Origin: Guillardia theta CCMP2712
Taxonomy: Eukaryota; Protista; Cryptophyta
Reading direction: 5' to 3'
NCBI RefSeq assembly: GCF_000315625.1
Contig: NW_005434661.1
Location: 768,345 to 832,344 of the forward strand
DNA length: 64,000 nt
Shown piece after piece: positions 9,245 to 24,438 of the stretch (within the stretch, counting starts at the first letter, position 1; every line of letters begins with the position of its first letter). A program made the position numbers and the translations under genes. The notes beneath the pieces are model-generated. The model was not told the origin of the DNA. It ran no database searches and worked only from the letters and a program-made list of their open reading frames with translations.

Positions 9245-11065
9245 TCATCGTCTTGATGGCGGAACATACTTGCCCATCGGTCTCGCTTTGTTTCCCGGAG
9301 AAGCTTTGGGCGTCGTTACTTTCTGTGGAGTTTTCCGCTCGAGGCTTGGCGACTTCTTGAGGCTCGCTTGGTTCTCGGCTTCTTCTTCTTCGCTGTTACT
9401 TGAGGTGCTGTTGCATTCCTCGTCTGGCTTGTTGCGCTCCTGGTTTGCAAACTCCACCTTCAACGTCGTGCAGCCACGTCCCCGGAGCTTCCGGCGCCCA
9501 AGCTCCGGGCAAGACGTGGACGTCAACGCCCTCAGCATCCTCCGCACTACCCACGGCACAGTCTGCATCAGCGGGTACCCCTGCTGATGATACTGCTCCA
9601 GCCTCTGAGCTACCGCTAGCGGAACGGTCTCCCAGCCGTTGTCTGTCTGAAAGCTCGTAGGCATCAAGATGCTGATCTCTCTCCCCGACGACGGCTTCCA
9701 GTCCCGCAAGATCCATCGCTGCACGTCGGTGATGGTGTTCTGACCGGCACATCCCGCACACTCTGCAATCTCCGTCGCACAGTTGAGATCTGGAACAAGA
9801 ATCACGCTCTGCAGCTCCTGTTGCACAACTGTGCCGGCCCCGCACAGGGCCTGGAACTGATCAGCCACCAGCACGGCGAACTGAACGCTCACTTCCCCCT
9901 GATTCTCTTCTTTTGACGAGGGTGCATACGCCCGTACCAAGATCAGAATCTGTACCAAGCAAGCAAGAGCGCTCAGGGGAGCCGCAGGGTAGTGAGAGCG
10001 AAGAAAGCTCTTGACGAACCGCAGCGGATCCTCGTGGTTGTTCCTCAGCTTGTTGATGTGCTCCAAGAAGGTCTGGACGAAGATTTTGCCGTACCGCTGC
10101 TCGTCCTCCCAGCTGTTGGGGACCAGTCCCTTGTCGCAGATCGCATGCGCATAGAGCAAAAGACCGTTGACCACCACCTTGGGATCATGGACATTTAGTT
10201 TGCGATGCGCGATCGTTGCCAACGCATCCTCAAACTTCGTCGCCAGCGATCGCGGCACTATTGCAAACTTCGTCTTCTTCCCATACATCGCATGTTGCCA
10301 ACCATACTGAGCCGGAGAAGGGAGATTGATCACGAAGGCGTTGGCGTGATCGAAGAAAGACCGCGTTTGCTTGATCTCCGAAGGAGTCCCGCGACAGAAC
10401 TCCAAGTCAAGGTTCCTGCCTGTTGTCGGATCGCCGATAGAGAGCAGACTGAACGATCCCACGACCACCTGCTTCTGAAAGTAAAAGCTTCGAACAATCG
10501 TCGACAGGTCCTTTGAGGGCGGTTGTACTGATCTGCTTTCAAACCACGTTGTGTATGCCTCTATGATAGCTTTCTCCACCACGTCTCTGCACTTGTCGAA
10601 GTCTAGCGTGCCGATGTAGAAGCGGAGGTCCAAGTCCGTAGGGACTACCCGCAGATCTTGGATTTTGAAGTCGTGTGCAATCACCGATCTTGCAACGCCG
10701 CCATACACTTCCACCACAGTCTCATATTCATTCTCTGAGTTCTTTTCTGCAATCTCGCGAAGTAAGCCATCCAGCTCCTCGGATATTTGCGCTATCAGAT
10801 CTCGAGGCTTCACGATCAACTCAGGCAAGTTCTCAGGCAGTTCAGACACCTGCGGCGTGACCATACGTCGTTGTGTGGGAACGACTTTGAAGTCGCTCGC
10901 CAGGATGTCACACAGTTTCTTTTGGCCGAGCTCACCCAATATCTGGTTATCACTCGCTGTCGCCGTGCTGCTGCTGTCGCCATTTCCGTTCGCTGGGCCT
11001 TTGCTGCTCATATTAGTTTCTGTAACGAGTGTACCATTTACAGAATCATTTTGTGCACCAGTCAT
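9245..11065 (-). CDS. TENT5: TENT5/FAM46-family terminal nucleotidyltransferase (non-canonical poly(A) polymerase), intronless, 606 aa
   Basis: VYGGVARSV...TDLDLRF (G[GS]...DxD), SLLSI..GRNLDLEF..RSFFDHANAFVI (cf. FAM46 GKNVELKF..RQFEFSVDSFQI) and FEDALATIAHRKL..DP..V.NGLLLY (cf. FEEAFDHLQNRLI..NPEEIRGGGLLKY). Confidence 0.85.
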   Translation of the reverse strand: MTGAQNDSVNGTLVTETNMSSKGPANGNGDSSSTATASDNQILGELGQKKLCDILASDFKVVPTQRRMVTPQVSELPENLPELIVKPRDLIAQISEELDGLLREIAEKNSENEYETVVEVYGGVARSVIAHDFKIQDLRVVPTDLDLRFYIGTLDFDKCRDVVEKAIIEAYTTWFESRSVQPPSKDLSTIVRSFYFQKQVVVGSFSLLSIGDPTTGRNLDLEFCRGTPSEIKQTRSFFDHANAFVINLPSPAQYGWQHAMYGKKTKFAIVPRSLATKFEDALATIAHRKLNVHDPKVVVNGLLLYAHAICDKGLVPNSWEDEQRYGKIFVQTFLEHINKLRNNHEDPLRFVKSFLRSHYPAAPLSALACLVQILILVRAYAPSSKEENQGEVSVQFAVLVADQFQALCGAGTVVQQELQSVILVPDLNCATEIAECAGCAGQNTITDVQRWILRDWKPSSGREISILMPTSFQTDNGWETVPLAVAQRLEQYHQQGYPLMQTVPWVVRRMLRALTSTSCPELGRRKLRGRGCTTLKVEFANQERNKPDEECNSTSSNSEEEEAENQASLKKSPSLERKTPQKVTTPKASPGNKARPMGKYVPPSRR

Positions 11066-11755: not shown

Positions 11756-13120
11756 GGTGGGTAGTGTATAGAATTTGGTAGGGTAGTCTCAAATGGTTTG
11801 AGCCAGTATCCATTTCAGCAATGCGTTGAAAGAGTAGGGTGGGGGTAAAATGATGGTAATGGACGGGTACACTGAAAACTTGCTCGAAATCTTCAAAAGG
11901 TTCAAAGCGTTGGAAGCCATGGATAGGACAGATCCGAGGGTGCTTGAACGTTCCGATGGAGGTAGGGGTGGGGTACCCCTTGGCTAGCAAGGGATGGGAT
12001 GCATGAAAGGTTCACCAATAGCTAGGGGGTAGTATCAGGATTCGAGGTGGTAATGGGGGTCATAGTTCATGTGTGCACCGGTGAAATTCCTGGGTAATCA
12101 AGGGGTCCTTCGGGGTACTTCTGAACGTGACAGCACGGGTACTGAATAATGGTTACTGGTAGGGGTCGTCGGCGCACGACCATCTTGAGTACCCCTACCG
12201 ACTAATGTCCTGATTCTCGTAGGGTGGTACATCCGCTCCATGGTATTTGAATCTCTTTACTCGGACCCCTCATATGGACCTATCAAGTACCCCCTCTACA
12301 CAACTTTCAAACCAAAGTACACCCCCACCCCTGTTTCAAATCGACACCCAGCAGCAATTGGCAAATATTTCGAAAATACTCCAGAATTGTCACAAGTTTC
12401 ATCTACTTTTTCTTTTCAAATTTGAAATTTTGAGTTTAAGAAATCAACATGTGTTGAAGTAAGAAATATACCCCACCCTCTTTCACCGTCCCTCAAAAAT
12501 TATCGAAGGAAATGATAACCAATAAACAGCTTATATCAAGGGGATTGAACTGAAAACAAGCAACTTTTGGTTATTATAACAGGGTCCTTACTTTAGAATA
12601 CAGTAGGGTGGGGGTACATGCACGTGCAATGATTTGTGGGTGGGTGGGGTACTGACATTTCTGATTGTACCCTATGATTTGCAGGAAGCAAGTGGGGTAA
12701 TTTCGAGAAGGGTGGGTAGTGAGATCTTTCATCATGTCATGGATTGCACGGCCAGAAAGTGTCTTTGGGTGGGGTGGGTACCACCACCCCATCAAATCTC
12801 TCTTTGACACATGGGTGATCAGTAAAAGTAGTAAAGAGGTACAGATGGGTTTAAAAAGATATGGTATCTTATTTTTATTAAAGATAGTACTAATTATATA
12901 GTCTCGTACATGACAATAATATTTATATAGGTACGATAGTCAATTCACTCATATGAACACCTATGTGGTACCGTGTGGTAGCCTAGAACTACTGATGAAG
13001 GTGTACCAATTCTTCAAACAGTACTTATCTGCACCCGGCTGCTTTCCATTACGATCACAAACTTATCATGCCACACGCTAGCGGCAGCGGCGCCCGGCCG
13101 CCAAGTCAGCAGCATTGTCA
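11756..13120. promoter_or_regulatory. Divergent intergenic GGGGT/ACCCC-rich block plus a short GGCC block
   Basis: Dense GGGGT/ACCCC motifs at 11756-12850 and gcggcagcggcgcccggccgcc at ~13081-13102, between TENT5 (minus) and the 13452 ORF (plus). Confidence 0.5.
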
Positions 13121-13451
13121 TCAGGTAGGCCCTTCAAAAATATTCATTTCTCCCAAGAAGATTTGATTATCCAGGAGAAAATGTCATACAAAATTTACGA
13201 TCATTTCAATGCGCCTGGTCTGCCCTCATTCTCGGTTCCACGTGGACCTCAGCCCGTACGTATCTCCCGAGTGCAACCTGAACTGATCAACCCGGTACAG
13301 TTTTAAAAGTAGGTTTTATATTGTACCGAATATGGTTCTGCACAAATCAAAATGTGTTTTACAAGTTACAAACTTTAAAAGTGTGTTTTATTTCCCCCGC
13401 CCATAAATAGGTAGTCGCCCTGCCTCCACCCTCCCACGACACGACGCGACA

Positions 13452-14045
13452 ATGCAAGGAGCAGGGAGAGGAGCGTGCATGCGACTCATGTATGCAGGAC
13501 ACTCAGGACCGGAGGCAATGAGATTCATGGGTGGCTGCTGTGCCAAGGCAGGACCAGTTGGTGGGCCACTGTCTCTCCGAGGTGGATTTGGAACTGGCGC
13601 CATGTTCGGAAAAGGAGGATGGGGCAAAGGGAAGGAATGCAAGTATGGACGATGGGGAGAGTCCGGAAAGGCGATCGAATTCACTTCCTCGTACAAGAAT
13701 GCCGATGCGGGAGCTTTTTCCGGAGCTGGAACCGGAGATTCCCAAGAAGCTCAGTTCACACAGCAGGAGATGTGGAGGGGCAGAGGTCGCTGTAGGAAGG
13801 GGTACGGCATGGGCCAAGGAGGTTTTGGAACTGGACAATGCAAAAAAGGCGATTTTCCAAGGAGTTGCCGTAAGCAAGCCATGCATGGAAGCAGGCAGGG
13901 TGCCACCGCGGAAGTTGCTGCCTCGAACGAGGCCAACGACTCGTCTCCTTCAAATGTGCCTGGCAACTGTTGCAAAGGCAGACGAATGGGACGGAGGAAC
14001 TGCAGGCAGCCAGCGATGGCAAATGCTCCAGGAGATCATGTCTAG
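13452..14045 (+). CDS. Gly/Cys/Arg/Lys-rich hypothetical protein, 197 aa, with an LSLRGG motif
   Basis: Clean ATG-to-stop ORF after a promoter-like region, followed by an AT-rich UTR-like tract; no recognisable domain. Confidence 0.5.
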   Translation: MQGAGRGACMRLMYAGHSGPEAMRFMGGCCAKAGPVGGPLSLRGGFGTGAMFGKGGWGKGKECKYGRWGESGKAIEFTSSYKNADAGAFSGAGTGDSQEAQFTQQEMWRGRGRCRKGYGMGQGGFGTGQCKKGDFPRSCRKQAMHGSRQGATAEVAASNEANDSSPSNVPGNCCKGRRMGRRNCRQPAMANAPGDHV

Positions 14046-15215
14046 GAGCCTATGAAAATTAGCTCCTCACAGACTCTAATGGGCGAAAGGGGGCGAGGAG
14101 GAGAATGAGTAAGTTTGTTTCAAGAAATCAAATCTTTCGCGGTTTTGATGCGATTTCATGTTGTGCTTAATTCTTTCTTTCTCTGTGTGTGAAGTGTGTA
14201 TCAAGTGAGGATCGAGCCCATGTTTCGCTTAAAAAGAATTCTGAATACAGAAGTCATCAAAACTCCGTGCGTCCTTCATTTCCATGTTTGACAGCCTTGA
14301 GTTCGCCAATTTCACCTCCGATTTCGCTTTCCCCAGACTCTAAACGAAAAGTCAACATATTGTCTTTTTTGGTTTGTGTCAATCTTGCTGTTGAATCGTT
14401 TTCCCGTTGCTCAGTTGCTTATATGATCAACAGTTGCTGCCTAACATGCCAGTTCAAGGTCTCAGCTCCTGACGCCACCATTACGGGGGAACTGAGATCT
14501 TGGAGCATCAATGGTGCACAGCCCATGTGTAAAAGACTTTTACACAAGTTCTTCTCCTTGGGCAGATTTACCATCCCCAAACTTGTTATGCTTGAGAACT
14601 GTCCTCTCGTCCCCACAGCAGAAACAAGTCACCCTTCGAAGCTTCATGTCGGCGTACTGCAAGTGAAGGGACCCATGACTGGGCAATACAAACACTCACC
14701 CTTCCTGTCTGCCTGGCCTACCGACGGACGGACAGACTGCAGCAATCCTGCCTTCTGTAACTCTTCCCCACCCCCCCTCCCCCCTTTCCCTTCTTTTCCT
14801 CCCTCTCCTCTTTCGTGGAACTTCCTCTCATGCTCGTCTTGCCCTCTCTCTGGAGCATCCTTCGTTGCCAGACCATCTCTGACCAGCACAACCCCTTTCC
14901 CCCCCTCCCCCCTCCTCCCATCCCCTCCCTTTCCTGCCAGTTCCATGCGTGCCACCGATTCCATCTCCTGCTTCATCCGTTCAAACTTGCCACAAAGATC
15001 ATATAAATAGTTGTAGACAAGTCTTTTGTACCAGAAAAAGTGAGAATAAAACCTGGTTTATATCGTTGTACCAGGAAAATTGGATTTCGCTCAGTCTCTA
15101 GGCGACCCTTTCCTAGCCTACGGCAGGGCTTCCCGCGACCCATAGTTAGAAAATCTCAAGAATGCCTGACGGTGACAGTGTGACAAGTTGGTCCTTGAAG
15201 TCAAAGTAATGTTTG

Positions 15216-15276
15216 AGTTTTGGTCATGAAGAAAAAGTATGATACTTAGTTTTGGTCATGAAGGAAAAGTAATACT
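15216..15276. repeat. Two ~30-bp tandem copies (AGTTTTGGTCATGAAG...AAAAGTA..ATACT)
   Basis: Copies start at 15216 and 15248. Confidence 0.7.
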
Positions 15277-15499
15277 CTAAATTGTCAACGAAGTCAAAGC
15301 ATGAAAAGCTGCTAGGGAGGAGCAGGAGCAGGAGCAGGAGGGCATGCATGAAGCAATATGAGAGCGACGTAGATGTGCCAGAAAGTTGGACATGTGAGAG
15401 AAAAGGAGGATGTGCGTGTGTGGAGGAACAGTTTTGCTTCCGATCTTTGTGCACTACGAATGACTGAGTGTTTCTTGATTATAGATATACCTCAGCACT

Positions 15500-16754
15500 A
15501 TGAAGTTCGCATTGGCCCTGTCGCTGGTTTTAATGATCTCTCCTGTTACTTCTTTCCTCACCTACACCGAACCTCGTGAATCGATCTTTTCCAGTGTGCG
15601 AGAGAGGGCAGTGAGTGTCTTGAGCTCTCCTTGCAGAGGATCGGATCCGGTAACAGCATGGAAGCGAAAAGACCTCCAGGAAGTCGAACTTTACAGAGAG
15701 AAGAATTTGCTCTAGATACCCCCAAGTCGAGGTTTTATCTTAACCCCTTTCCCCTCAAGCCATACAACACTGAGAGGAAGACAAGACAATAGCGAAGAAG
15801 ATAGATGACAACATCTACACCTTCGAGCAGGAGCACGGCTTTGCCAACGTTTCTGTCAACTTCAGGATGACAGTGGTCAGGCTCAACGATGGAGGACTCT
15901 GAGTGCATGCCCCCGTAGCCCCGACTGAGGAATGTGTAGCCATGATGAAGAAGCTAGGAGAGTTGAAGTACGTTGTCCTCCCCACCACGGGCCTCGAGCA
16001 CAAGACTGAGATCTTCATGAAGCCCTTCATGAGCTACTTCCCCAACGCCAAGGCCTACGTCGGTAGTGGATCTGGCCAATCGACCTCTCCCGCATGCGGT
16101 AAGGTGTATTTGACGTATATGACCTCGGGTTCAAGGTGAGCTAGCGAGCCCCTAGCCCTCTTGTTCCTGACATTGGCCAGGTGGAGGGAGTGCTGCAAGA
16201 CATGGACCCCAACGTTCCCTGGTCGAAGGAGATCGAGCAGAAGGTGGTGTATGCCGAGGTTGGCATCGGGAAGACCAGTGAGGTCGCCTTCTTCCACAAG
16301 AAGTCGTCGACGCTCTTCGTCACTGACGCGGTCATCTTCATCCCTCCCGAGGCCCCGGAGGTCTTACAGGCCTACGGGGAGGAGGAGAACAAGTGGAAGG
16401 GGTCAGCTCTTCCTCGGTCTCCCCTAAGTTCCCTCATTCGACGTGATAGCAGGGAAGCTCTTCGTCAGCCCGGTTATGAGAACTTTCATCTATGAGCGGA
16501 CGCCGGACGAGACCAGGGACTGGATCCAGCGCATCTGCCAATGGAGGTTCAGGAGGATTATCCCGGCACATCTCAACGCTCCTGTCGCTGCTGGGCCCGC
16601 AGACTTCAAGGAGGCGTTCAAGTTCCTTGACGTACCCACGTCGAATCCCCTCCCGAGGGCGACATGGGCCCCCTTAACCCCATCAGCAAGCTCCTCACCC
16701 TCTCCTGCTCGTCCCGGCTCGAGCGGCAGATCGCCTGTGAGAGCTGGAGGATAG
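15500..16754 (+). pseudogene. DUF4336-family protein with a plastid-type signal peptide, disrupted
   Basis: MKFALALSLVLMISPVTS-F leader; IYTFEQ..RMTVVRL.DGGL*VHAPVAPT, LPTTGLEHK, EVAFFHKKSSTLFVTDA and W.FRRIIPAH. Lesions: TGA at 15900-15902 (conserved Trp), TAG at 16064-16066 and a 5-bp duplication frameshift at 15778-15787. Confidence 0.75.
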
Positions 16755-17607
16755 TGAACCATCTGAGTGATTAAACCAACATGTCGTGAAGAGATTCGCC
16801 TTCAGCATAGTCCAATAGGCTGAATAGCGTCGTTCACATTATTCCTTAAGGTGGTCACCAGTCCTGCTCACTCGTGGGGTTAACGCGCTGAATTTCACAC
16901 AATCAGTCCAGAAACCTTCAGGTGAGTTTCAGTGGACAAGTGTCGGTGCGATGTCAACGTCTTATGTGATAACGAATTCATGTCGAAGAATCATAGCAGG
17001 GTAAGAAAGGTTCATTGTTGAATATTCTTTGAGGCCAAAAGGGCCAACCTTTCTGAAGCTTTCTTCATATCACTGCCGGGACTCGCTCGACAAAAATCTC
17101 AACCTCTTAAGATTCGCCATTGAATCGATCAGGTTCTGCCTTCACCAGTAGCTCGTGGGCAAGAAAGAGAGAGTACAAGGGCACGCAACGCCCTGCCGCC
17201 TCCTATCGTTCTGCTCTCACGAATTTCATCTTCAAGGGGCATCGTAACCCTCTAGTGGTGGTCATGCTCATACTCAAAGGAAGCCCGATCAGAATCCAAA
17301 GAACTATCATGATTCCATGCATGGTAGACGACGAGAGGCAATCAGATGACTGCAGAAAGAGGGGAAGCACTCGTATAGTTGTACCTCCTAATGTAATCCA
17401 GCTTGACAGCTTGCTGGCCTTCAGGCTGCTGCCTTGGTGAAGGGAACATCCTTCCACGTCTTCGCTCATCAACCCTGCCAGTGAACCCTGACACGTTCTT
17501 TGTGCTGCTTCAGTGTTGTCTAACGAACCATATAGGACTTGGTTCCTCGAGAGATCTTGAAGTTGAAATGTTGAGCTTCAGTGGCAACCTAACAGTCATA
17601 GTCAGCA

Positions 17608-17799
17608 AGCCACGTCCCCGGAGCTTCCGGCGCCCAAGCTCCGGGCAAGACGTGGACGTCAACGCCCTCAGCATCCTCCGCACTACCCACGGCTTCATGG
17701 TCCGTCGGTGCATCCGACCTGCTGATGATACTGCTCCAGCCTCTGAGCTACCGAAGCCGTGGGTAGTGCGGAGGATGCTGAGGGCGTTGACGTCCACGT
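17608..17799. repeat. Partial duplication of the TENT5 CDS forming a perfect 47-bp inverted repeat
   Basis: 17608-17693 = 9472-9557 (86 nt identical); 17718-17753 = 9580-9615 (36 nt identical); arms 17650-17696 and 17753-17799 are exact reverse complements. Confidence 0.95.
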
Positions 17800-18149
17800 G
17801 TAAAAGACGATCTCAGGCCTCTTAGCGAGTACACGCGCACAGGTGTCAAACACACAAAGCGCTCTCTGAGCTTCTTGCACTCTTCACGGCAACCCGCAGG
17901 CATTCTGCTCTCCCCTTGCGATGAGCGCCTTCCAGGACCCCCGGGGTAGTCATGGTGCTGCTACTCAGATAGCCCTTACTTCAAAGCCTTGAGAGTCGCA
18001 ACGGTTCTGGACTTGTACGTCGGTTGCTATGAGCAGAGAAGGACTAAAACGGACGGAGATCATTATGTCCAGGTCGGCCAGCCGAGGACTACTGTTGAGA
18101 TCCTACTGAAACAACACCAGCATCGTCAGCAGCTGTTAAATCTTTGATA

Positions 18150-21100
18150 ACCTTCAAGCCTCCAAATTTCCTCAATCATGATCCTGATGGGTCTCAGGTT
18201 TCAAGCTTTGTTTTCCTCTTCTGCACCCCTCTCTGCCTCTGCCTCTGCCTCTGCCTTTGCCTCACTTGCAAGGTTCCTCGTCTTCTGCCTCTCTCTTGCT
18301 CCTTCCCGCTCCTTCTCCTTGTCTGCATACAACATCATGACAACTAGAAGCACAGCCAGCCAACCTCACCTGCCGCCCTGCCTCACATGACATTCTCCCG
18401 CATCGGCCTGGATCTCCTCCTCTTCTGCAGCATTTGCTGTAAAGCACATCAGTGGCTGATCTGCCTGCTCCTCTCCTATAACCTCATACTGCGGAATCTC
18501 CTTCAGAATGTACTCAAAGTCCCTGCTCAAGCTCACGATCAGACGATCGTGAGTCGGAGGACAAGGCAGAGCACCAGTGCTTTCCCCTGTGCCCCGAACG
18601 GAGAGCCTTCTCGTATCCCTTGTCTATGGGGCAAGAGCGACTGGCATTGAAGGCCTGGGCGACAAAAGCCATGGGAACAACCTCAACGGAAAGTGAGCAA
18701 GAAACAGAGATGCGGGAAGAGGAGGTAGGTAAGAAGAGAGAGATGCTGAAAGGAGCGGAGGATAGAAACGTTGTTTGAAAGGAATGCTATGTTGAGAAGA
18801 GAGAGGAAGGGGCATCGGAGGTCTACCAAGGTTGGCCGGGCGCTTCTTTTGCGTAGGAGGTACCAAGTTTCGTTGTTTACCCTATAGTGCATGTAGCTGA
18901 AGAAAAACGTCAGCAGAACCTCAGCACAGTCCTCGTCATCTCACCCGAACATATCGATGAAATTGACGCCCTCTGCCTTTACTGTACAATATTCACCACA
19001 TCCAGGGGAGCCATCCCCCTGCCCTGCTGTAGCTCCTGCATCTTGCTCCTGGCTCCCTTGCAGGGCATCTCCCTCCTTCTCCATCACGCGGTCCATCACT
19101 GCGTCCACGGGTGAGGAGAGGATCGCTGAGATCGCCCGCTGGTCATCCGTCCCACCCTCTTCCCTCCCTGTCGGGCAGACACTGCATGAGCCGGATGGCT
19201 GCTGGACTCCTGCTGCATGAGCAGTGGCCTCCAAAGAGAAAGGCTGGAGGCAGAGGGGAGTCAACAAGCACGAAGAAGAGTACACAAACAACGACGAGGA
19301 CAGGACTGACGTCAAACAAGTGAGATCGAGGAGGAGGGAGCGCAAAGGACATGAGATCAGCAGCACAGACCTCCGAGTTTTCTCTCTTGTGGTCTTTGCA
19401 ACCTTTCTTGGACGGGTAGAACCTGTCGAGAGAAACCTGGGACGACTCATGCGAGTTGAAGTGATAGTAAGTGATAAAGGATCCCCTGAGAAAAATAAGC
19501 GTCAAGAACAAGGGGAGTGATGAGTTCTTGACGCTCATTTTTCTGATGAGTTTCGTTATCAGAAAGGCGAAAGATAGGCGAGATATGTTGTAAAAGCATA
19601 ACAAGGATGTCAACATCTGAGCGCCATTACCGGATAGCATGAGCGGTTCTAGAGTGGCATAAGATCGGATACCATGCAACGGCAAACCTGCAAGAGAGTC
19701 AGTGGGTAGTGGAACATACATGCTTCCTCCTCTGACACGCATGCTTCCTCCTCTGACACGCATGCTTCCTCCTCTCACCATGAGCGTTCGAGCACAAGAT
19801 CGTCATTGCTGATTTCCATCAGGATGTGCGACAGCAGCTCCTCTTCCCTCTCGCCCTCCTGCACCGATAGGGTCAGCAACGAGTCAGCACCGTCGAGCTC
19901 GCAGACGGAGACGTCACCGTCTTCAAAGAAGGCAGCTCCAGAATCCCATCATACAAGGGAGGTCGTTCTCCAGGGCTTCTCTCCTCGTAGAACTACGGTC
20001 CCTTTGTCAACTCCCGTGTGAAACGCGCATGCTCCCTCGCTCACCTCGAAGACTGCTTCGCTTTGCATGTCGCCAGATGAGGCTGCAGAACGTGGCCGGT
20101 AAGCTTTCCAGTGTCTTCACCATCATCCATCAGCCTACCGCCGTCACCTCCATTCCTCGTCTGCCTTCCGTCTGGGCCTGCTCTCTTCTCCTGCTCGTCC
20201 CGCAACTCGCCTGGCAGACCTTCTGCCATTGAAAGTGAGTCTCGACATGCCGCCTGACCCCGCAGGCCTACTTTGAGCACGTCGGTCAGTGAGCTGCTGG
20301 CTGCTGTCCTGCTCCCCTTTGGAACTCTGCGTTGCGGGCCAGCTCACAGCAGAGGTATAAGAGTACTTGGGACAAGACGATCCTTGTCCTTGATTGCAAG
20401 GCCGCCCGCCAGAGTTTGAGCCGTCCCCTCCTGCCTCCATCCCAGCATCTTCGTACGGGTTGATACCTCCTTGTATCTGGGCAGACACTCGACTAGCCCA
20501 TGAGAGCGAAGCAGCTTCCTCCCTCCTCTGCTGAGCCTCCAGTGCCTGATGACCAACATCATGCGTGATCGCGGAACAGTTACACTCTCACCAGCTTAGC
20601 AGTTTTGATCTCCTCCTCTCGTCTTTGCTTGATCTCAGCGAGCTCGACACATAGGGGATAGCTCGGTGAGTCCTTCCGAACAAACAACTGCACAAAGGGG
20701 AAAAGAGTCAACTGGAGCAAAGGTGCTGGCGAGTTGAGAACAGAAGAGAAAGACGAGAGTAGAGCTGAACAAAGAAGATAGACAGCACCGACCTTGATCG
20801 CAGACAGGTGAGGCACGTAGAAAGCTGGCGTGATCTCTGCAGCAATATGGTGCGTCTTCCCATACAGCAATCATTCTCGCGCAGACGACGGACAAAAACC
20901 AACCTGAGTGGTGGAACTTTTCAGGAGGATGGGAACTTCAAACCCGTAAGGCTTGTCGAACCATTCCCACAGCTGCCTCAGACTAGCACAAGGACTCAAC
21001 AACAAGAATCCACAGGATTCCTCCTCGTTGCAGACCTGAAACTTCCCTTGGGCACCTTTGGGACAACTGCCTGAAAGAAGAAATAGATGTTCTCATCTGC

Positions 21101-23322
21101 AGCACCAGACTGTTTAGGATGCAATCGGCACAATCATGACAGCATAACACCTGATGTTGGTTTCCCGTCTTTGTTGATGTATTTCTGATTTGATTGAGCA
21201 TCACATCAACACAAAAAGATGAAACACCCCACCTTCCGCGATGCATTCAAACCAGAGGTTGTAGAGTCGACCGAGGTCGTGTGCGAGGTTTCAGAAACAT
21301 CGTCAGGCCTGATATCTCCCGACACCCTCACTCCCTGCGATCTCGTGTACTCTGCATTCTGGATCTGGATGAACTGGTTCAAAGACGTTGACCCGGTCGT
21401 CTTGGTAACAGCTTCCGTCTCGTCCTGCGACACATGCAAAACTTCACGAGAGACAGACAAGGAGCTGACAGTCTGCTGTGCAGTCTGCTGATACTGGAAT
21501 TGCGTTATTGGCACTGCAGTAGGCTGTGCGGGTGCAGGGAAAAAGTAGGCTCCCTGTGCTTGCCCGTCGGTGCCCTGCATCACCATGTAATATTCCGGCT
21601 GGGCACCTAACAGGGGACTTGTGTTGCTCTGGCTGTCGCCGTTGCCGTTCGCGGGGCCTATGTTGCTCTTGAATGTTTCTGTTATCAAGCTGAGTGGATA
21701 CCACTTCTGCAAACTCCAATCTCAATGCTGTATATAGCATCGACAGCAGCTCCTTTACCTCAGCCTGGACGCCCTGCGCCATCCAGGAATCGCCGGGTGA
21801 CACAGGAAGAGCCATTTGGGAGTGCAAGGGACTTTGCGCTGCTGTTCCGATGTTACCTCTTCCCTCGTGAGATCCACTCTTAGTGGAGGGAGCGCAGAGC
21901 TGGGAACCATCGGTAATAGTCATTCACGATAAGGAAGGTGTCTCGGACATCAAACCTCAGCGAAGCTCCCAGACGTTTGGAGGACCTGCAATGCTCTGGC
22001 AAACTCCTCAAGAATATCTTGTACGGTGTAGTCGTTGACGTATCTCCCCAAGTCAAGGTTGATGTCGAAAGGATCCTCTATGCAAAATATATGCCTGTGA
22101 CCCGTGAGCAAGTTGAAATGTTTTGGATGAAGGGCTCTTACCTGTTTCTGAAGTCTTCCGAGGTATCCCATCCCTTCGCCTTCTTCCTGAGAAGCCTTCC
22201 ACTTCGTATACTCACAACTCCCTTATCAATCGGAAAGACTGGAAACATGCTTTAGTCGGCGTTGCTGCATCCATTCCGGTGTACCATTGGAGTAGAAGTG
22301 GAAGAACCCAACGAGAAGAAGCCCCAGCGATGAACGATTGTTCCTTTCACCGAAACCTGGAGAACTTTCATCGAAGAAACGAGCCTTGCACTGTTACTCG
22401 CTAATGTCTCAACGTTTCTGTAGAAGTAGCAGTCGTACACATCTCCGTCACAGGAAACAGCAAACGATGGATCGTTGTTCAGCGTGGCCTGTACGCGCCG
22501 CAGACTTTGCAAGCACGGCAGCACTCTTTCATACTGCAGGTATTGGATTACCATCAACGTATACGTGTAAGAACTCAGATAGCCTCTGAAGGTTTTGTGA
22601 ATTCGACGTTGCTTCACCCAGTGCTTGATGCACATGATCAGCGGCCTGACCCTCTTGTCCAGCATGGTGTATGTGAACAGCAAGTCGGTATTGATACAGG
22701 CAAGGACATTGTTGACACTCAGATCGCAGTCAAAGACAAAATCAAGACCGTCTTGCGCCTTGAACTTGATGATAGGAACTCGGGCATAGGGCAGAGCCTC
22801 AACATTCAACATTCCTTCCCTTTCCAGCAGCCTAGCAAGACCAATGAGAAAAGATATAAATTTTTCTTTCTGTGAGTTTGCCGTCATCATGCAATTGTCC
22901 GCGAACCAGCAGGATTCAAGCTGTGTGTTCATAAACACTCCTTGACTCTTTTGAATCTCATCTTCAGGAACAACAACACACAAGTCTACATCTGAGCCCT
23001 TGGAGCAAAGGTTGCTCCCAAATGAACCAAACATCTGTACTCTCGAATTTGGATAAGTCCTTGCAATGGTCGTGTTCAATGTTGTACAGACGCTAATCTT
23101 ACGATCGATTTCTTCTCTAGGAGGACAGATCTCCGCCACAAAACTCATGCAATCATTAGAAAGGAGATCCATATGTTCGGCTTTCACCTTGGGGTTCACA
23201 ATGCTCGTACACAAAGTTGGCGGTTGTGTGTCGAGACTGGTCGTGAGGTGCTCATCGCTGACCCCTGCAGCACCCCTGTAATAGGCTCCCTTGATCTCGG
23301 CAACATACAGCGATGGCAGCAT
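18150..23322 (-). CDS. Cid1/TUT/URT1-type terminal uridylyltransferase with a PAP-associated domain, apparently spliced in frame to a C-terminal DUF789 domain (3' end approximate)
   Basis: MFGSFGSNLCSKGSDVDLC, ARVPIIKF, CDLSVNN, IKHWVK..LSSYTYTLMVIQYLQ, SLGLLLVGFFHFY and IEDPF. Then the DUF789-like NIYFFFQAVVPKVP, SLRQLWEWFDKPYGFEVP, FYVPHLSAI, FYEERSPGERPPLYDGI, SW and SFITYYH. Confidence 0.8.
19718..19778. repeat. 21-bp tandem repeat (CATGCTTCCTCCTCTGACACG, ~3 units), intronic
   Basis: Read directly. Confidence 0.85.
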
Positions 23323-24438
23323 GCTTGGGTTTATTAAAATCGGCGAGCACTGATTTGCCTGAATCCCTCAGCTCCACCCTGTTCATTGCCCGGTCATTAC
23401 CGTGGGAAATCTCCCGCCAAGACAGTTTCAAGAAAAGAATGCAAACAAAAGGGCAAGCTCAGCAGAAGATACCAATCCTTGAAAAGACATGAATATGTTT
23501 CTTCTCCTCCTCAACCTCCTAGTACGCTAACTTATACCTCTTGCACATATCCAGCTCAGATTTGTGGTCAAAGAAAAAGAAACCCTCCTTCTGGACTGAA
23601 AGCAACATGTAGAGGGGAAACGTTTCGATCAACGAGCTGTCTATCTGCCATGACATATGCAGGTGGTGGTAGGGGGGGGGGGGGGGGGGTAGGTGGATGA
23701 CGAGTCAAAACTGATCGTTTGAAATCAGATGGAAAGGAAGCCTAGGTAGTATGATAGCCTCTAAATACTGGGATACTTCTTATGAAATATCGACCCTTGA
23801 CGCGAGCTGCACATGGTCATTTCAGCTTTATATACATGTACCCACCCCTGCTCTGTACCCGAGCTTCAAAATTTCATAGCAGCGAGCTAGGAACCGGGGT
23901 TTATTAGACCGAGGGTATAGACTCTGGGGGTGGGTGGGTGATATGACCCCGCCTCAGAGATTTACAATATAGTTTTATTCAAAATTATGATTCATAAGAC
24001 ATTATTGCTGCTTCAAGAATGTTGAAAGTTTTGAAGTTTAAAGTTTATTGAGTTCACTCTACAAGAGAGTTCTGATCTATTGAGGTTCATAAGAAAGAGT
24101 TTTGTCGGCATCTATCTCACCGAAGATGCACAACTCGGGTCTCTCTTCTCCTTGGGCACTGATTTCCGTACTGCAAGTGAAGGGACCCATGACTGGACGC
24201 TGCTAGCAGGCTCTGATCGCCCCGCCCGGGGGGCTGGGGGGGCCGGCAGCCTTGCCAAAGGCAGTCACTGAGACTCCGGGACCGTACGCCGCCTAACTGT
24301 TCAAGCCGGGTTCCGAGTTCAAACTTACCACAAAGACTTTGATGAGTGAAACATTAGTAGGAGAATGAAAAATAACTTAACTCCTTGTTGCCTTGCCCAA
24401 TGCTGCGGCTGGTTGACAGTGCAGGCGTTCGGCGCTCC

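What the first reader, a model, noticed from the sequence alone, without database searches (positions are those of the whole stretch)
10973..11029. 19-aa motif shared between the TENT5 N-terminus and the TUTase linker (21632-21688)
TENT5 LVTETNMSSKGPANGNGDS versus TUTase LITETFKSNIGPANGNGDS: ungapped, 14/19 identical. Five identical residues use different codons (ctc/ttg, act/aca, cca/ccc, gga/ggc, aat/aac), and all 3 nucleotide differences in GPANGNGDS are silent, which points to selection on the peptide rather than recent copying. Both copies lie in predicted disordered regions outside the catalytic folds. The TUTase copy is in frame after ordinary GT-AG splicing. I do not recognise it as a known short linear motif.
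Basis: partly seen in the sequence, partly recalled or inferred. Interest (0 to 1): 0.8.

Follow-up and report, generated by a model that had tools for sequence, protein, structure and literature searches.

The report
Old TENT5 gene fragment beside TUTase
The peptide shared by two neighbouring RNA-tailing enzyme genes of the alga Guillardia theta is real, but it is most likely an old copied piece of the first gene left behind the stop codon of the second, with no sign of expression there; this is ordinary genome turnover and not a new binding motif.

Summary
On the minus strand, 10973-11029 and 21632-21688 encode 19-mers that are 14/19 identical (43/57 nt), far above chance, and they are the only two copies in the window.

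The reading as a selected short linear motif is not supported. The window is Guillardia theta CCMP2712 (JH992977.1). A sister copy of the TUTase locus on JH993005.1 carries the same peptide. There the similarity to TENT5 runs on collinearly through codons 12-52, into the first conserved helix of the TENT5 fold. So the "motif" is the best-kept core of a copied piece of TENT5 N-terminal coding sequence.

The copy is old: 70-80% nt identity, about the Guillardia-Hanusia divergence. That age explains the different codons.

On the TUTase side the piece lies about 260 nt past a stop codon kept in all three TUTase paralogues. It comes into frame only if two unverified small introns are spliced. No RNA covers it in 13 G. 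theta RNA data sets, and the gene shows no codon-position signal of constraint.

In TENT5 the peptide is transcribed, sits in a disordered tail and is kept in Hanusia phi (18/19). A 96%-identical environmental relative has deleted most of it.

Interest is low.

The parts
10973..11029 (-). Copy 1 of the peptide, residues 13-31 of TENT5 (LVTETNMSSKGPANGNGDS).
   Evidence: Translation. It is 100% identical to the G. theta transcript contig L003, and an in-frame stop lies upstream of M1. pLDDT is below 50. Hanusia phi keeps 18/19 residues.
9245..11065 (-). TENT5/FAM46-type nucleotidyltransferase ORF, 606 aa plus stop, single exon.
   Evidence: Pfam PF07984, 33.2 bits against a cut-off of 27. YGG and DxD residues are invariant in the 18-sequence alignment. 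Mismatches to Hanusia by codon position are 55/34/206. The NCBI model P0021 starts at M19 (11011), which cuts the peptide.
21632..21688 (-). Copy 2 of the peptide (LITETFKSNIGPANGNGDS).
   Evidence: Translation. No RNA depth here. RNA assemblies hold 0.00-0.01 of the words of 21438-23322.
21626..21691 (-). Full extent of TENT5 similarity at copy 2, matching TENT5 residues 12-33.
   Evidence: tblastn 15/22. DNA identity is 78% to G. theta TENT5 over 58 nt and 80% to Hanusia TENT5 over 64 nt. The sister locus L005:9185-9298 extends the similarity to residue 52.
21950..23322 (-). Cid1/GLD-2-type nucleotidyltransferase ('TUTase', GUITHDRAFT_66394). Exons are 23322-22398, 22356-22285, 22238-22142 and 22094-21956, followed by GTT TGA (stop at 21950-21952).
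   Evidence: Pfam PF22600 and PF03828. My introns reproduce the annotated protein P0028, which ends ...SGSFAEV. The stop is kept in L005 and L006. Mismatches by codon position are 20/22/18 against L005 and 16/14/11 against L004.
21438..21899 (-). Hypothetical extra exons that would bring copy 2 into the TUTase frame: E5 21899-21759, a 52-nt GT-AG gap at 21758-21707, and E6 21706-21438.
   Evidence: The frame is open in the window and in L005. E5 differences to L005 are 5/5/1 by codon position. No RNA and no annotation.
21437..21437 (.). Breakpoint. Spliced RNA contigs that match 19484-21437 at about 97% stop matching here, in mid-ORF and not at a splice site. A DNA data set has loose ends in both directions here.
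   Evidence: (tables 5, 7, 8).
17543..17799 (-). Second TENT5-derived patch. It resembles TENT5 residues 484-531 (146 nt at 90%) and carries an inverted 44-nt copy. It shows that TENT5 pieces get copied locally.

Best explanation
The two peptides are alike because one is a copy of the other's gene. A piece of the TENT5 N-terminal coding sequence was copied at the DNA level to a place about 260 nt downstream of the stop codon of a Cid1-type nucleotidyltransferase gene. The piece covers codons 12-33 as preserved in this window and codons 12-52 in the better preserved sister locus on JH993005.1. That it is a homologous, collinear copy is shown. The direction TENT5 to TUTase is inferred from the copy running into the conserved first helix of the TENT5 fold. 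The copy was made before that nucleotidyltransferase locus was itself duplicated; this is shown, since both 94%-identical loci carry it at the same place. It is about as old as the Guillardia-Hanusia split; this is inferred from 70-80% nt identity against 81% between the TENT5 orthologues. Age, plus purifying selection on the TENT5 side, explains identical residues written with different codons. The TUTase-side copy is most likely an untranslated relic in a gene region that is not detectably expressed and drifts freely (inferred). Whether the piece was copied alone or is what remains of a larger TENT5 copy is open.
For: The window is G. theta CCMP2712 JH992977.1.

Sister-locus evidence:
- The TUTase has paralogues on JH993005.1 (L005, 94% nt) and JH993056.1 (L006, 80% nt).
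- L005 carries the peptide at the same position. Its similarity to TENT5 continues as TLMTETSKSNIGPANGNGDSQSNTSANENRVLGEL---KLC, matching TENT5 residues 12-52 (E 5e-10 for G. theta, 4e-11 for Hanusia).
- L43 and L51, reached by this copy, are nearly invariant and invariant across distant TENT5 homologues and lie at helix 45-56 of the model.

DNA-level similarity is 58-96 nt at 70-80%.

Evidence against translation on the TUTase side:
- The annotated TUTase proteins of the window and of L006 end at ...(A/E)EV. The GAG GTT TGA stop is kept in all three loci.
- No RNA covers 21500-23490 in one raw RNA run and two RNA assemblies that do contain TENT5 and the neighbouring spliced transcript.
- Twelve RNA-type assemblies hold 0.00-0.01 of the words of 21438-23322.
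- NCBI annotates nothing from 16496 to 21011.
- phmmer of the L005 ORF against 1.84 billion representatives finds no protein containing it.

Evidence on constraint:
- TUTase substitutions are flat over codon positions: 20/22/18, 16/14/11, and 5/5/1 for E5.
- TENT5 gives 55/34/206.
- L005 carries a 40-nt frameshifting deletion.

A second TENT5-derived patch at 17.6 kb shows that local copying happens. A 96%-identical environmental relative has lost 18 of the peptide's flanking and core residues by two in-frame deletions while the rest of TENT5 stays intact.
Against: After GT-AG splicing with introns of typical size, the frame from the TUTase into the peptide is open in both the window and L005. 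In the window it stays open through twelve RNA-supported intron positions into a DUF789-like C-terminal part. Within GPANGNGDS the four known copies differ by six or seven base changes, all silent. The window and L005 fragments give dN/dS of about 0.3, but from seven changes only, so this is not significant. Absence of RNA is weak evidence: only about 6% of the raw run was read, and read laying could be used only once. The GT that overlaps the stop is conserved too, so 'conserved stop' and 'conserved donor' cannot be told apart by sequence.
Confidence: 0.75

Rival explanations
1. Functional shared module. The TENT5 N-terminal peptide is also translated as part of a spliced C-terminal extension of the TUTase (or of a TUTase-DUF789 fusion). 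Selection keeps it because both enzymes dock to the same partner through it.
For: The frame is open after GT-AG splicing in two paralogues. GPANGNGDS is invariant in four copies with only silent changes. In TENT5 the 19-mer differs at 1 of 19 residues between Guillardia and Hanusia, against 10 of 23 in the flanks (Fisher p 0.006). The peptide lies in a disordered tail.
Against: There is no RNA or annotated protein for the TUTase-side copy. The linking exon E5 changes 5/5/1 by codon position, and the catalytic exons show no constraint. L005 is frameshifted upstream. A close relative deleted LVTET and NGNGDS from TENT5. Distant TENT5 homologues lack the peptide. The silent-change argument is circular once the best conserved nine residues are picked, and such a run arises by chance in 14-30% of simulations.
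Confidence: 0.13
2. Reverse direction. The peptide arose in the TUTase 3' region and TENT5 acquired its N-terminal tail from there.
For: Neither the first 11 TENT5 codons nor its 5' UTR resemble the sequence upstream of the TUTase-side copies, so the copied block has sharp ends in both genes.
Against: In L005 the block runs into LGEL..KLC, the start of the conserved TENT5 core that is shared with distant homologues lacking any TUTase neighbour. Hanusia TENT5 has the whole block. The oldest TUTase paralogue, L006, lacks it.
Confidence: 0.04
3. Chance or low-complexity coincidence between two polar, Gly/Asn-rich stretches.
For: A DNA pattern for GPANGNGDS finds 10 unrelated hits in metagenomes, so the nonapeptide alone is not unique. 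A dockerin-like repeat protein resembles NGNG..QSN.
Against: The match is 14/19 against a maximum of 10 in 300 shuffles. The DNA match has E 2e-5 within the window. Similarity is collinear over 41 residues in L005.
Confidence: 0.01

Closest known systems
Gene-fragment duplicates and relics left by segmental duplication and rearrangement (partial pseudogenes, possible raw material for chimeric genes)
   Same: A short collinear piece of a parent coding sequence sits in a foreign context and was duplicated again together with its new neighbour. It has no expression evidence, shows drift-like substitutions, and lies in a region with other copied patches and breakpoints.
   Different: The reading frame into the piece happens to be open after plausible splicing in two copies, so an exonised fragment is not excluded.
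Short linear motifs in disordered tails of RNA-tailing enzymes (docking peptides)
   Same: The peptide is short and polar, lies in a disordered tail, and is better conserved than its flanks between two TENT5 orthologues.
   Different: It recurs only in copies related by descent and not in unrelated proteins. It is lost in a close relative and absent from distant TENT5 proteins. No partner is known. Its second context is not shown to be translated.
FAM46/TENT5 non-canonical poly(A) polymerases; a Guillardia theta member is already listed by Kuchta et al. 2016 (PMC4857005)
   Same: Pfam PF07984 scores above its cut-off. The G-G and DxD active-site residues are present. The AlphaFold2 model gives a confident fold from about residue 41 to about residue 515.
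   Different: The N-terminal tail carrying the peptide is specific to Guillardia and Hanusia. Activity is untested.

Membership tests
FAM46/TENT5 (PF07984 NTP_transf_7) | Profile match above Pfam's gathering score | tested here: met
   33.2 bits against 27, E 4e-8, residues 79-342.
FAM46/TENT5 (PF07984 NTP_transf_7) | Nucleotidyltransferase active-site pattern (G-G/S followed by DxD) | tested here: met
   Y121 G122 G123 and D144 D146 are invariant in the 18-sequence alignment.
FAM46/TENT5 (PF07984 NTP_transf_7) | Poly(A) polymerase activity | not testable with these tools
   Needs an enzyme assay.
Cid1/GLD-2-type terminal nucleotidyltransferase ('TUTase') | Central palm domain plus PAP-associated domain | tested here: met
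   PF22600 E 4e-29 on exon 1. PF03828 E 3e-18 on P0028.
Cid1/GLD-2-type terminal nucleotidyltransferase ('TUTase') | Preference for UTP, which would justify the name TUTase | not tested
   The selectivity residues were not examined, so 'TUTase' is only a label here.
Short linear motif | Translated in each protein said to carry it | tested here: inconclusive
   TENT5: yes at the RNA and ORF level. TUTase side: no RNA and no annotation, and it lies beyond a conserved stop.
Short linear motif | Recurs in proteins unrelated by descent, or is kept across orthologues against a variable background | tested here: not met
   All copies are one homologous block. There are no hits elsewhere. Hanusia TENT5 keeps it, but a 96%-identical relative has deleted it.
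Short linear motif | Lies in a disordered region | tested here: met
   TENT5 residues 1-38 have pLDDT 26-39 and no secondary structure. The TUTase side was not modelled.
Gene-fragment duplicate (relic) | Collinear similarity to the parent gene beyond the conserved core, at the DNA level as well | tested here: met
   TENT5 residues 12-52 in L005. 58-96 nt at 70-80%.
Gene-fragment duplicate (relic) | No expression and no coding constraint in the new context | tested here: inconclusive
   No RNA and flat codon-position counts around it. But the counts inside the fragment are too small: 4 non-silent and 3 silent changes between the two copies.
DUF789 (PF05623), said to be fused downstream | Profile match | tested here: inconclusive
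   Only one 26-residue exon gives a sub-threshold hit, E 0.11, 12.6 bits against 25.5. The spliced protein could not be submitted whole.

The most novel reading that the evidence does not exclude
The TENT5 N-terminal tail peptide (L-x-T-E-T...G-P-A-N-G-N-G-D-S, up to 41 residues) is a transferable docking module. Exon capture placed it on a spliced C-terminal extension of a Cid1-type nucleotidyltransferase, so that two different RNA-tailing enzymes of Guillardia are recruited by the same partner.
Probability: 0.1. Interest if true: 0.55.

Novelty: new member of a known kind. Interest (0 to 1): 0.15.

Why it matters
As found, it matters little. It is one more example of a coding fragment carried to a new place by duplication in a rearrangement-prone stretch of the Guillardia theta genome. 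It also warns that identical residues with different codons between two genes do not alone show selection on a motif when one partner is a constrained parent gene and the copy is old. Two by-products are useful for annotators. The TENT5 start codon is probably 18 codons upstream of the annotated one. An 83-nt stretch of the TENT5 gene in the assembly disagrees with every transcript. Only if the TUTase-side copy were shown to be spliced and translated would it become an interesting case of a captured docking peptide shared by two RNA-tailing enzymes.

Tried and rejected
1. An exact look-up of the 606-aa ORF found nothing on record. The cluster look-up then showed that the annotated model starts at M19 and that transcripts differ in an 83-nt patch.

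2. The metagenome scan with a degenerate DNA pattern for GPANGNGDS gave 10 loci. All were bacterial or non-ORF chance contexts without LxTET. The collection does not hold the cryptophyte transcriptomes, so the blank says little.

3. phmmer of the L005 117-aa ORF against 1.84 billion representatives gave two spurious repeat proteins: a dockerin-like GD-x-NGNG..QSND repeat and an unrelated repeat.

4. Nei-Gojobori dN/dS on 25-35 codons gave saturated or undefined dS. It was judged too noisy and replaced by DNA identity and site-pattern counts.

5. I looked for a whole decayed TENT5 copy between the two TENT5-like patches at 21.6 and 17.6 kb. tblastn at word size 2 finds nothing between them, and the two patches differ in age (75% against 90-100% identity).

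6. I looked for similarity of the TENT5 5' UTR or first 11 codons to the sequence upstream of the TUTase-side copies and found none.

7. No Hanusia TUTase orthologue was found within the length limits of the word search. The third word search was not spent.

8. The paper search for TENT5 in Guillardia found none.

Read laying was kept under 6000 letters.

Full report
**What is there**

- They align without gaps, with 14/19 residues and 43/57 bases identical. The three base differences inside GPANGNGDS are all silent.
- A six-frame scan finds only these two copies in the 64 kb.
- Shuffling TENT5 gives a best 19-mer identity of 7.6 on average and never more than 10 in 300 trials, so the match is not chance.

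Copy 1 is residues 13-31 of a 606-aa single-exon ORF (9245-11065) that matches Pfam NTP_transf_7 (FAM46/TENT5) above its cut-off.

Copy 2 lies about 560 nt downstream of an ORF (22252-23322) with the Cid1-type palm domain. The annotated protein from this locus also has the PAP-associated domain.

**Whose genome, and is copy 1 expressed**

The window is Guillardia theta CCMP2712, scaffold JH992977.1.
- A G. theta transcript contig (L003) is 100% identical to 11713-9556. It has an in-frame stop upstream of the first ATG at 11065 and no intron there.
- So copy 1 is transcribed and lies inside the ORF.
- The NCBI model starts 18 codons later, at M19, in the middle of the peptide.
- An AlphaFold2 model built on 18 homologues gives pLDDT 26-39 and no secondary structure for residues 1-38. 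The confident fold starts at about residue 41, with a helix at 45-56.
- TENT5 as a whole is under strong purifying selection: mismatches to Hanusia phi by codon position are 55/34/206.
- A G. theta FAM46 member is already listed in the literature (PMC4857005).

**The key result: the similarity is longer in a sister locus**

The nucleotidyltransferase has two paralogues in the same genome:
- L005 on JH993005.1, 94% nt identity to the window from 23293 down to 21617;
- L006 on JH993056.1, about 80% identity down to 21853.

L005 carries the peptide at the same place, and there the similarity to TENT5 goes on. TLMTETSKSNIGPANGNGDSQSNTSANENRVLGEL---KLC matches TENT5 residues 12-52, with E 5e-10 for G. 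theta and 4e-11 for Hanusia.

The end of this block (LGEL..KLC) is the start of the conserved TENT5 core. L51 is invariant and L43 nearly invariant across distant homologues, and the block reaches helix 45-56 of the model.

In the window the homology to L005 ends at 21617, just after the peptide, so only the first 22 residues of the block survive here.

The "motif" is therefore the best-kept part of one copied segment of TENT5 coding sequence. The copy was made before the nucleotidyltransferase locus was duplicated. The direction TENT5 to TUTase region follows from the block containing native TENT5 core sequence, and from L006, the oldest paralogue, lacking it.

**Age**

| Comparison | Length | Identity |
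|---|---|---|
| G. theta TENT5 vs window copy | 58 nt | 78% |
| G. theta TENT5 vs L005 copy | 96 nt | 70% |
| Hanusia TENT5 vs window copy | 64 nt | 80% |
| Hanusia TENT5 vs L005 copy | 96 nt | 74% |
| G. theta TENT5 vs Hanusia TENT5, same region | 280 nt | 81% |

The copy is thus about as old as, or somewhat older than, the Guillardia-Hanusia split. The copies share states with Hanusia TENT5 (SNT..NEN) that G. theta TENT5 has since changed.

**Does the codon pattern show selection on the peptide?**

Not convincingly.
- Half of the path between TENT5 and a copy runs along the constrained TENT5 lineage, which contributes mostly silent changes.
- On the branch separating the two TENT5 genes from the two copies I count by hand, from the codon table, about 7 silent and 9-10 non-silent changes. 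The binomial probability of at least 7 silent changes among 17, given a neutral silent share of 0.24, is 0.09.
- Between the two copies there are 4 non-silent and 3 silent base changes (dN/dS about 0.3, too few to test).
- Zero non-silent changes inside GPANGNGDS is circular evidence once the best conserved window is chosen. At 61-68% identity, a run of nine identities in 38 positions arises in 14-30% of simulations.
- Nei-Gojobori dS on these 25-35 codons is saturated or undefined and was not relied on.

**Is copy 2 translated?**

On paper it can be. Introns of 41, 46, 47, 56 and 52 nt with GT-AG ends give one open frame from the first ATG through the peptide.
- The first three introns reproduce the annotated protein P0028.
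- The frame is open in L005 too.
- In the window it continues through twelve intron positions seen in RNA contigs into a DUF789-like C-terminal part.

But the 56-nt intron would begin at a GT inside GAG GTT TGA.
- That is the stop codon where the annotated proteins of the window and L006 end (...SGSFAEV and ...SGSFEEV). It is kept in all three loci.
- The L005 annotation does splice there, but then uses another frame that ends inside the peptide.

No RNA supports any of this.
- One raw RNA-seq run (about 6% read) and two RNA assemblies give zero depth on 21500-23490. The same data contain TENT5 transcripts and a strongly expressed spliced transcript next door.
- Twelve RNA-type G. theta assemblies from several studies hold 0.00-0.01 of the words of 21438-23322.
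- NCBI annotates no gene between 16496 and 21011.
- No protein among 1.84 billion representatives contains the L005 ORF with the copy.

**Constraint around copy 2**

- Differences between the window and L005 are flat over codon positions in the catalytic exon (20/22/18). In the hypothetical linking exon they are 5/5/1. Exons are no better conserved than the introns.
- L005 has a 40-nt frameshifting deletion, so part of this drift is its own.
- An independent comparison with an environmental relative (L004) is flat as well (16/14/11), and that relative's gene is truncated.
- The TUTase genes of this clade therefore look like a family in turnover, in contrast to TENT5 next door.

**Constraint on copy 1**

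- Between Guillardia and Hanusia TENT5 the 19-mer has 1 change, against 10 in the 23 flanking tail residues (Fisher p 0.006). The tail core may matter for TENT5.
- Against this, two metagenome contigs that are 95-97% identical in DNA (L001, L004) carry an otherwise intact TENT5. Two in-frame deletions, of 36 and 18 nt, have removed NDSVNGTLVTET and NGNGDS.
- More distant TENT5 homologues have unrelated tails.
- A metagenome scan for the nonapeptide found only chance contexts.

**Context: a patchwork region**

- A second TENT5-derived patch (146 nt at 90%, plus an inverted 44-nt copy) lies at 17543-17799.
- At 21437, 195 nt downstream of copy 2, spliced RNA contigs that match 19484-21437 at about 97% stop matching in mid-ORF. 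A DNA data set has loose ends in both directions there. This points to a paralogue or haplotype boundary.
- The environmental relative has 1.09 kb where the window has 10.4 kb, between 22498 and 12059.
- In L006 the TUTase paralogue is followed, in an open frame, by a canonical poly(A) polymerase-like ORF.
- Copy 2 thus sits in a mosaic of copied and rearranged pieces.
- It may be what is left of a larger TENT5 copy. This is suggested by the collinear N- and C-terminal patches on either side of the DUF789-like segment. It cannot be shown: nothing TENT5-like lies between them, and the two patches differ in age.

**Verdict**

The interpretation as a selected short linear motif shared by two enzymes is not supported. 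Copy 2 is an old duplicated fragment of the TENT5 N-terminal coding sequence, most likely untranslated there (confidence 0.75). A functional captured peptide remains possible at roughly 0.1-0.13 and could be settled by junction-spanning RNA reads.

This is a new instance of a known kind of event, and interest is low. Earlier notes of this scan concern only this same window, and none reports the feature on other DNA.

Noticed in passing
window 9473-9555 (minus strand, TENT5 residues about 504-531): The assembly's TENT5 has an 83-nt stretch (PWVVRRMLRALTSTSCPELGRRKLRGRG) with no resemblance to the 86 nt found at this place in the G. theta transcript contig L003, in RNA contigs of two runs, in the environmental relative and in Hanusia (LNALRYSDHSVTKVREYAKYSVEEICKMR). 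It equals the copy at 17.6 kb, and the flanks are 100% identical to the mRNA. It could be a gene-conversion patch, a second allele or an assembly error.
   Followed up: partly
window 11011 vs 11065: The NCBI gene model for TENT5 (588 aa) starts at the internal Met19. Transcript-derived ORFs start 18 codons upstream at 11065, with an in-frame stop before it and a 5' UTR of at least 648 nt.
   Followed up: yes
window 19484-21437 (minus strand): A strongly expressed spliced transcript (12 GT-AG introns of 46-145 nt) matches at about 97%, with a 6-nt indel, and diverges at 21437. It probably comes from a paralogue or another haplotype with a different 5' end. The window's own copy is unannotated at NCBI, yet keeps an open frame into a DUF789-like C-terminus (...SWFAVAWYPI...).
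   Followed up: partly
window 17500-17747: RNA contigs of two runs (2382 nt and 532 nt) match this stretch exactly and stop at 17747. The TENT5-like patch therefore lies inside a transcribed region, possibly the end of the plus-strand DUF4336 gene's transcript. If so, that transcript would carry antisense TENT5 sequence.
   Followed up: no
L004:1104-2193 vs window 12059-22498: In an environmental relative (95% nt identity) the TUTase is cut off at the equivalent of 22498 and is followed, after 1.09 kb of unmatched DNA, by the TENT5 upstream region. About 10.4 kb of the window is absent there.
   Followed up: partly
L006:8940-9420 (JH993056.1): The third TUTase paralogue is followed within about 450 nt by a canonical poly(A) polymerase-like gene. 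Its open frame reaches back into the sequence homologous to the window's 21760-21900. This may be a fusion or a shared exon.
   Followed up: no
L005:7600-8560 (JH993005.1) and window 22890-22930: The sister TUTase has a 40-nt frameshifting deletion and a 15-nt deletion in the catalytic exon. The window has a 36-40-nt stretch (VFMNTQLESCWFADNC) that is missing from both L005 and the environmental relative.
   Followed up: partly
P0035: The only significant phmmer hit of the L005 fragment ORF is a bacterial-type dockerin-like repeat (GD-I-NGNG-x-LQSNDT), which resembles GPANGNGDSQSNTS. This is probably compositional, not homology.
   Followed up: no
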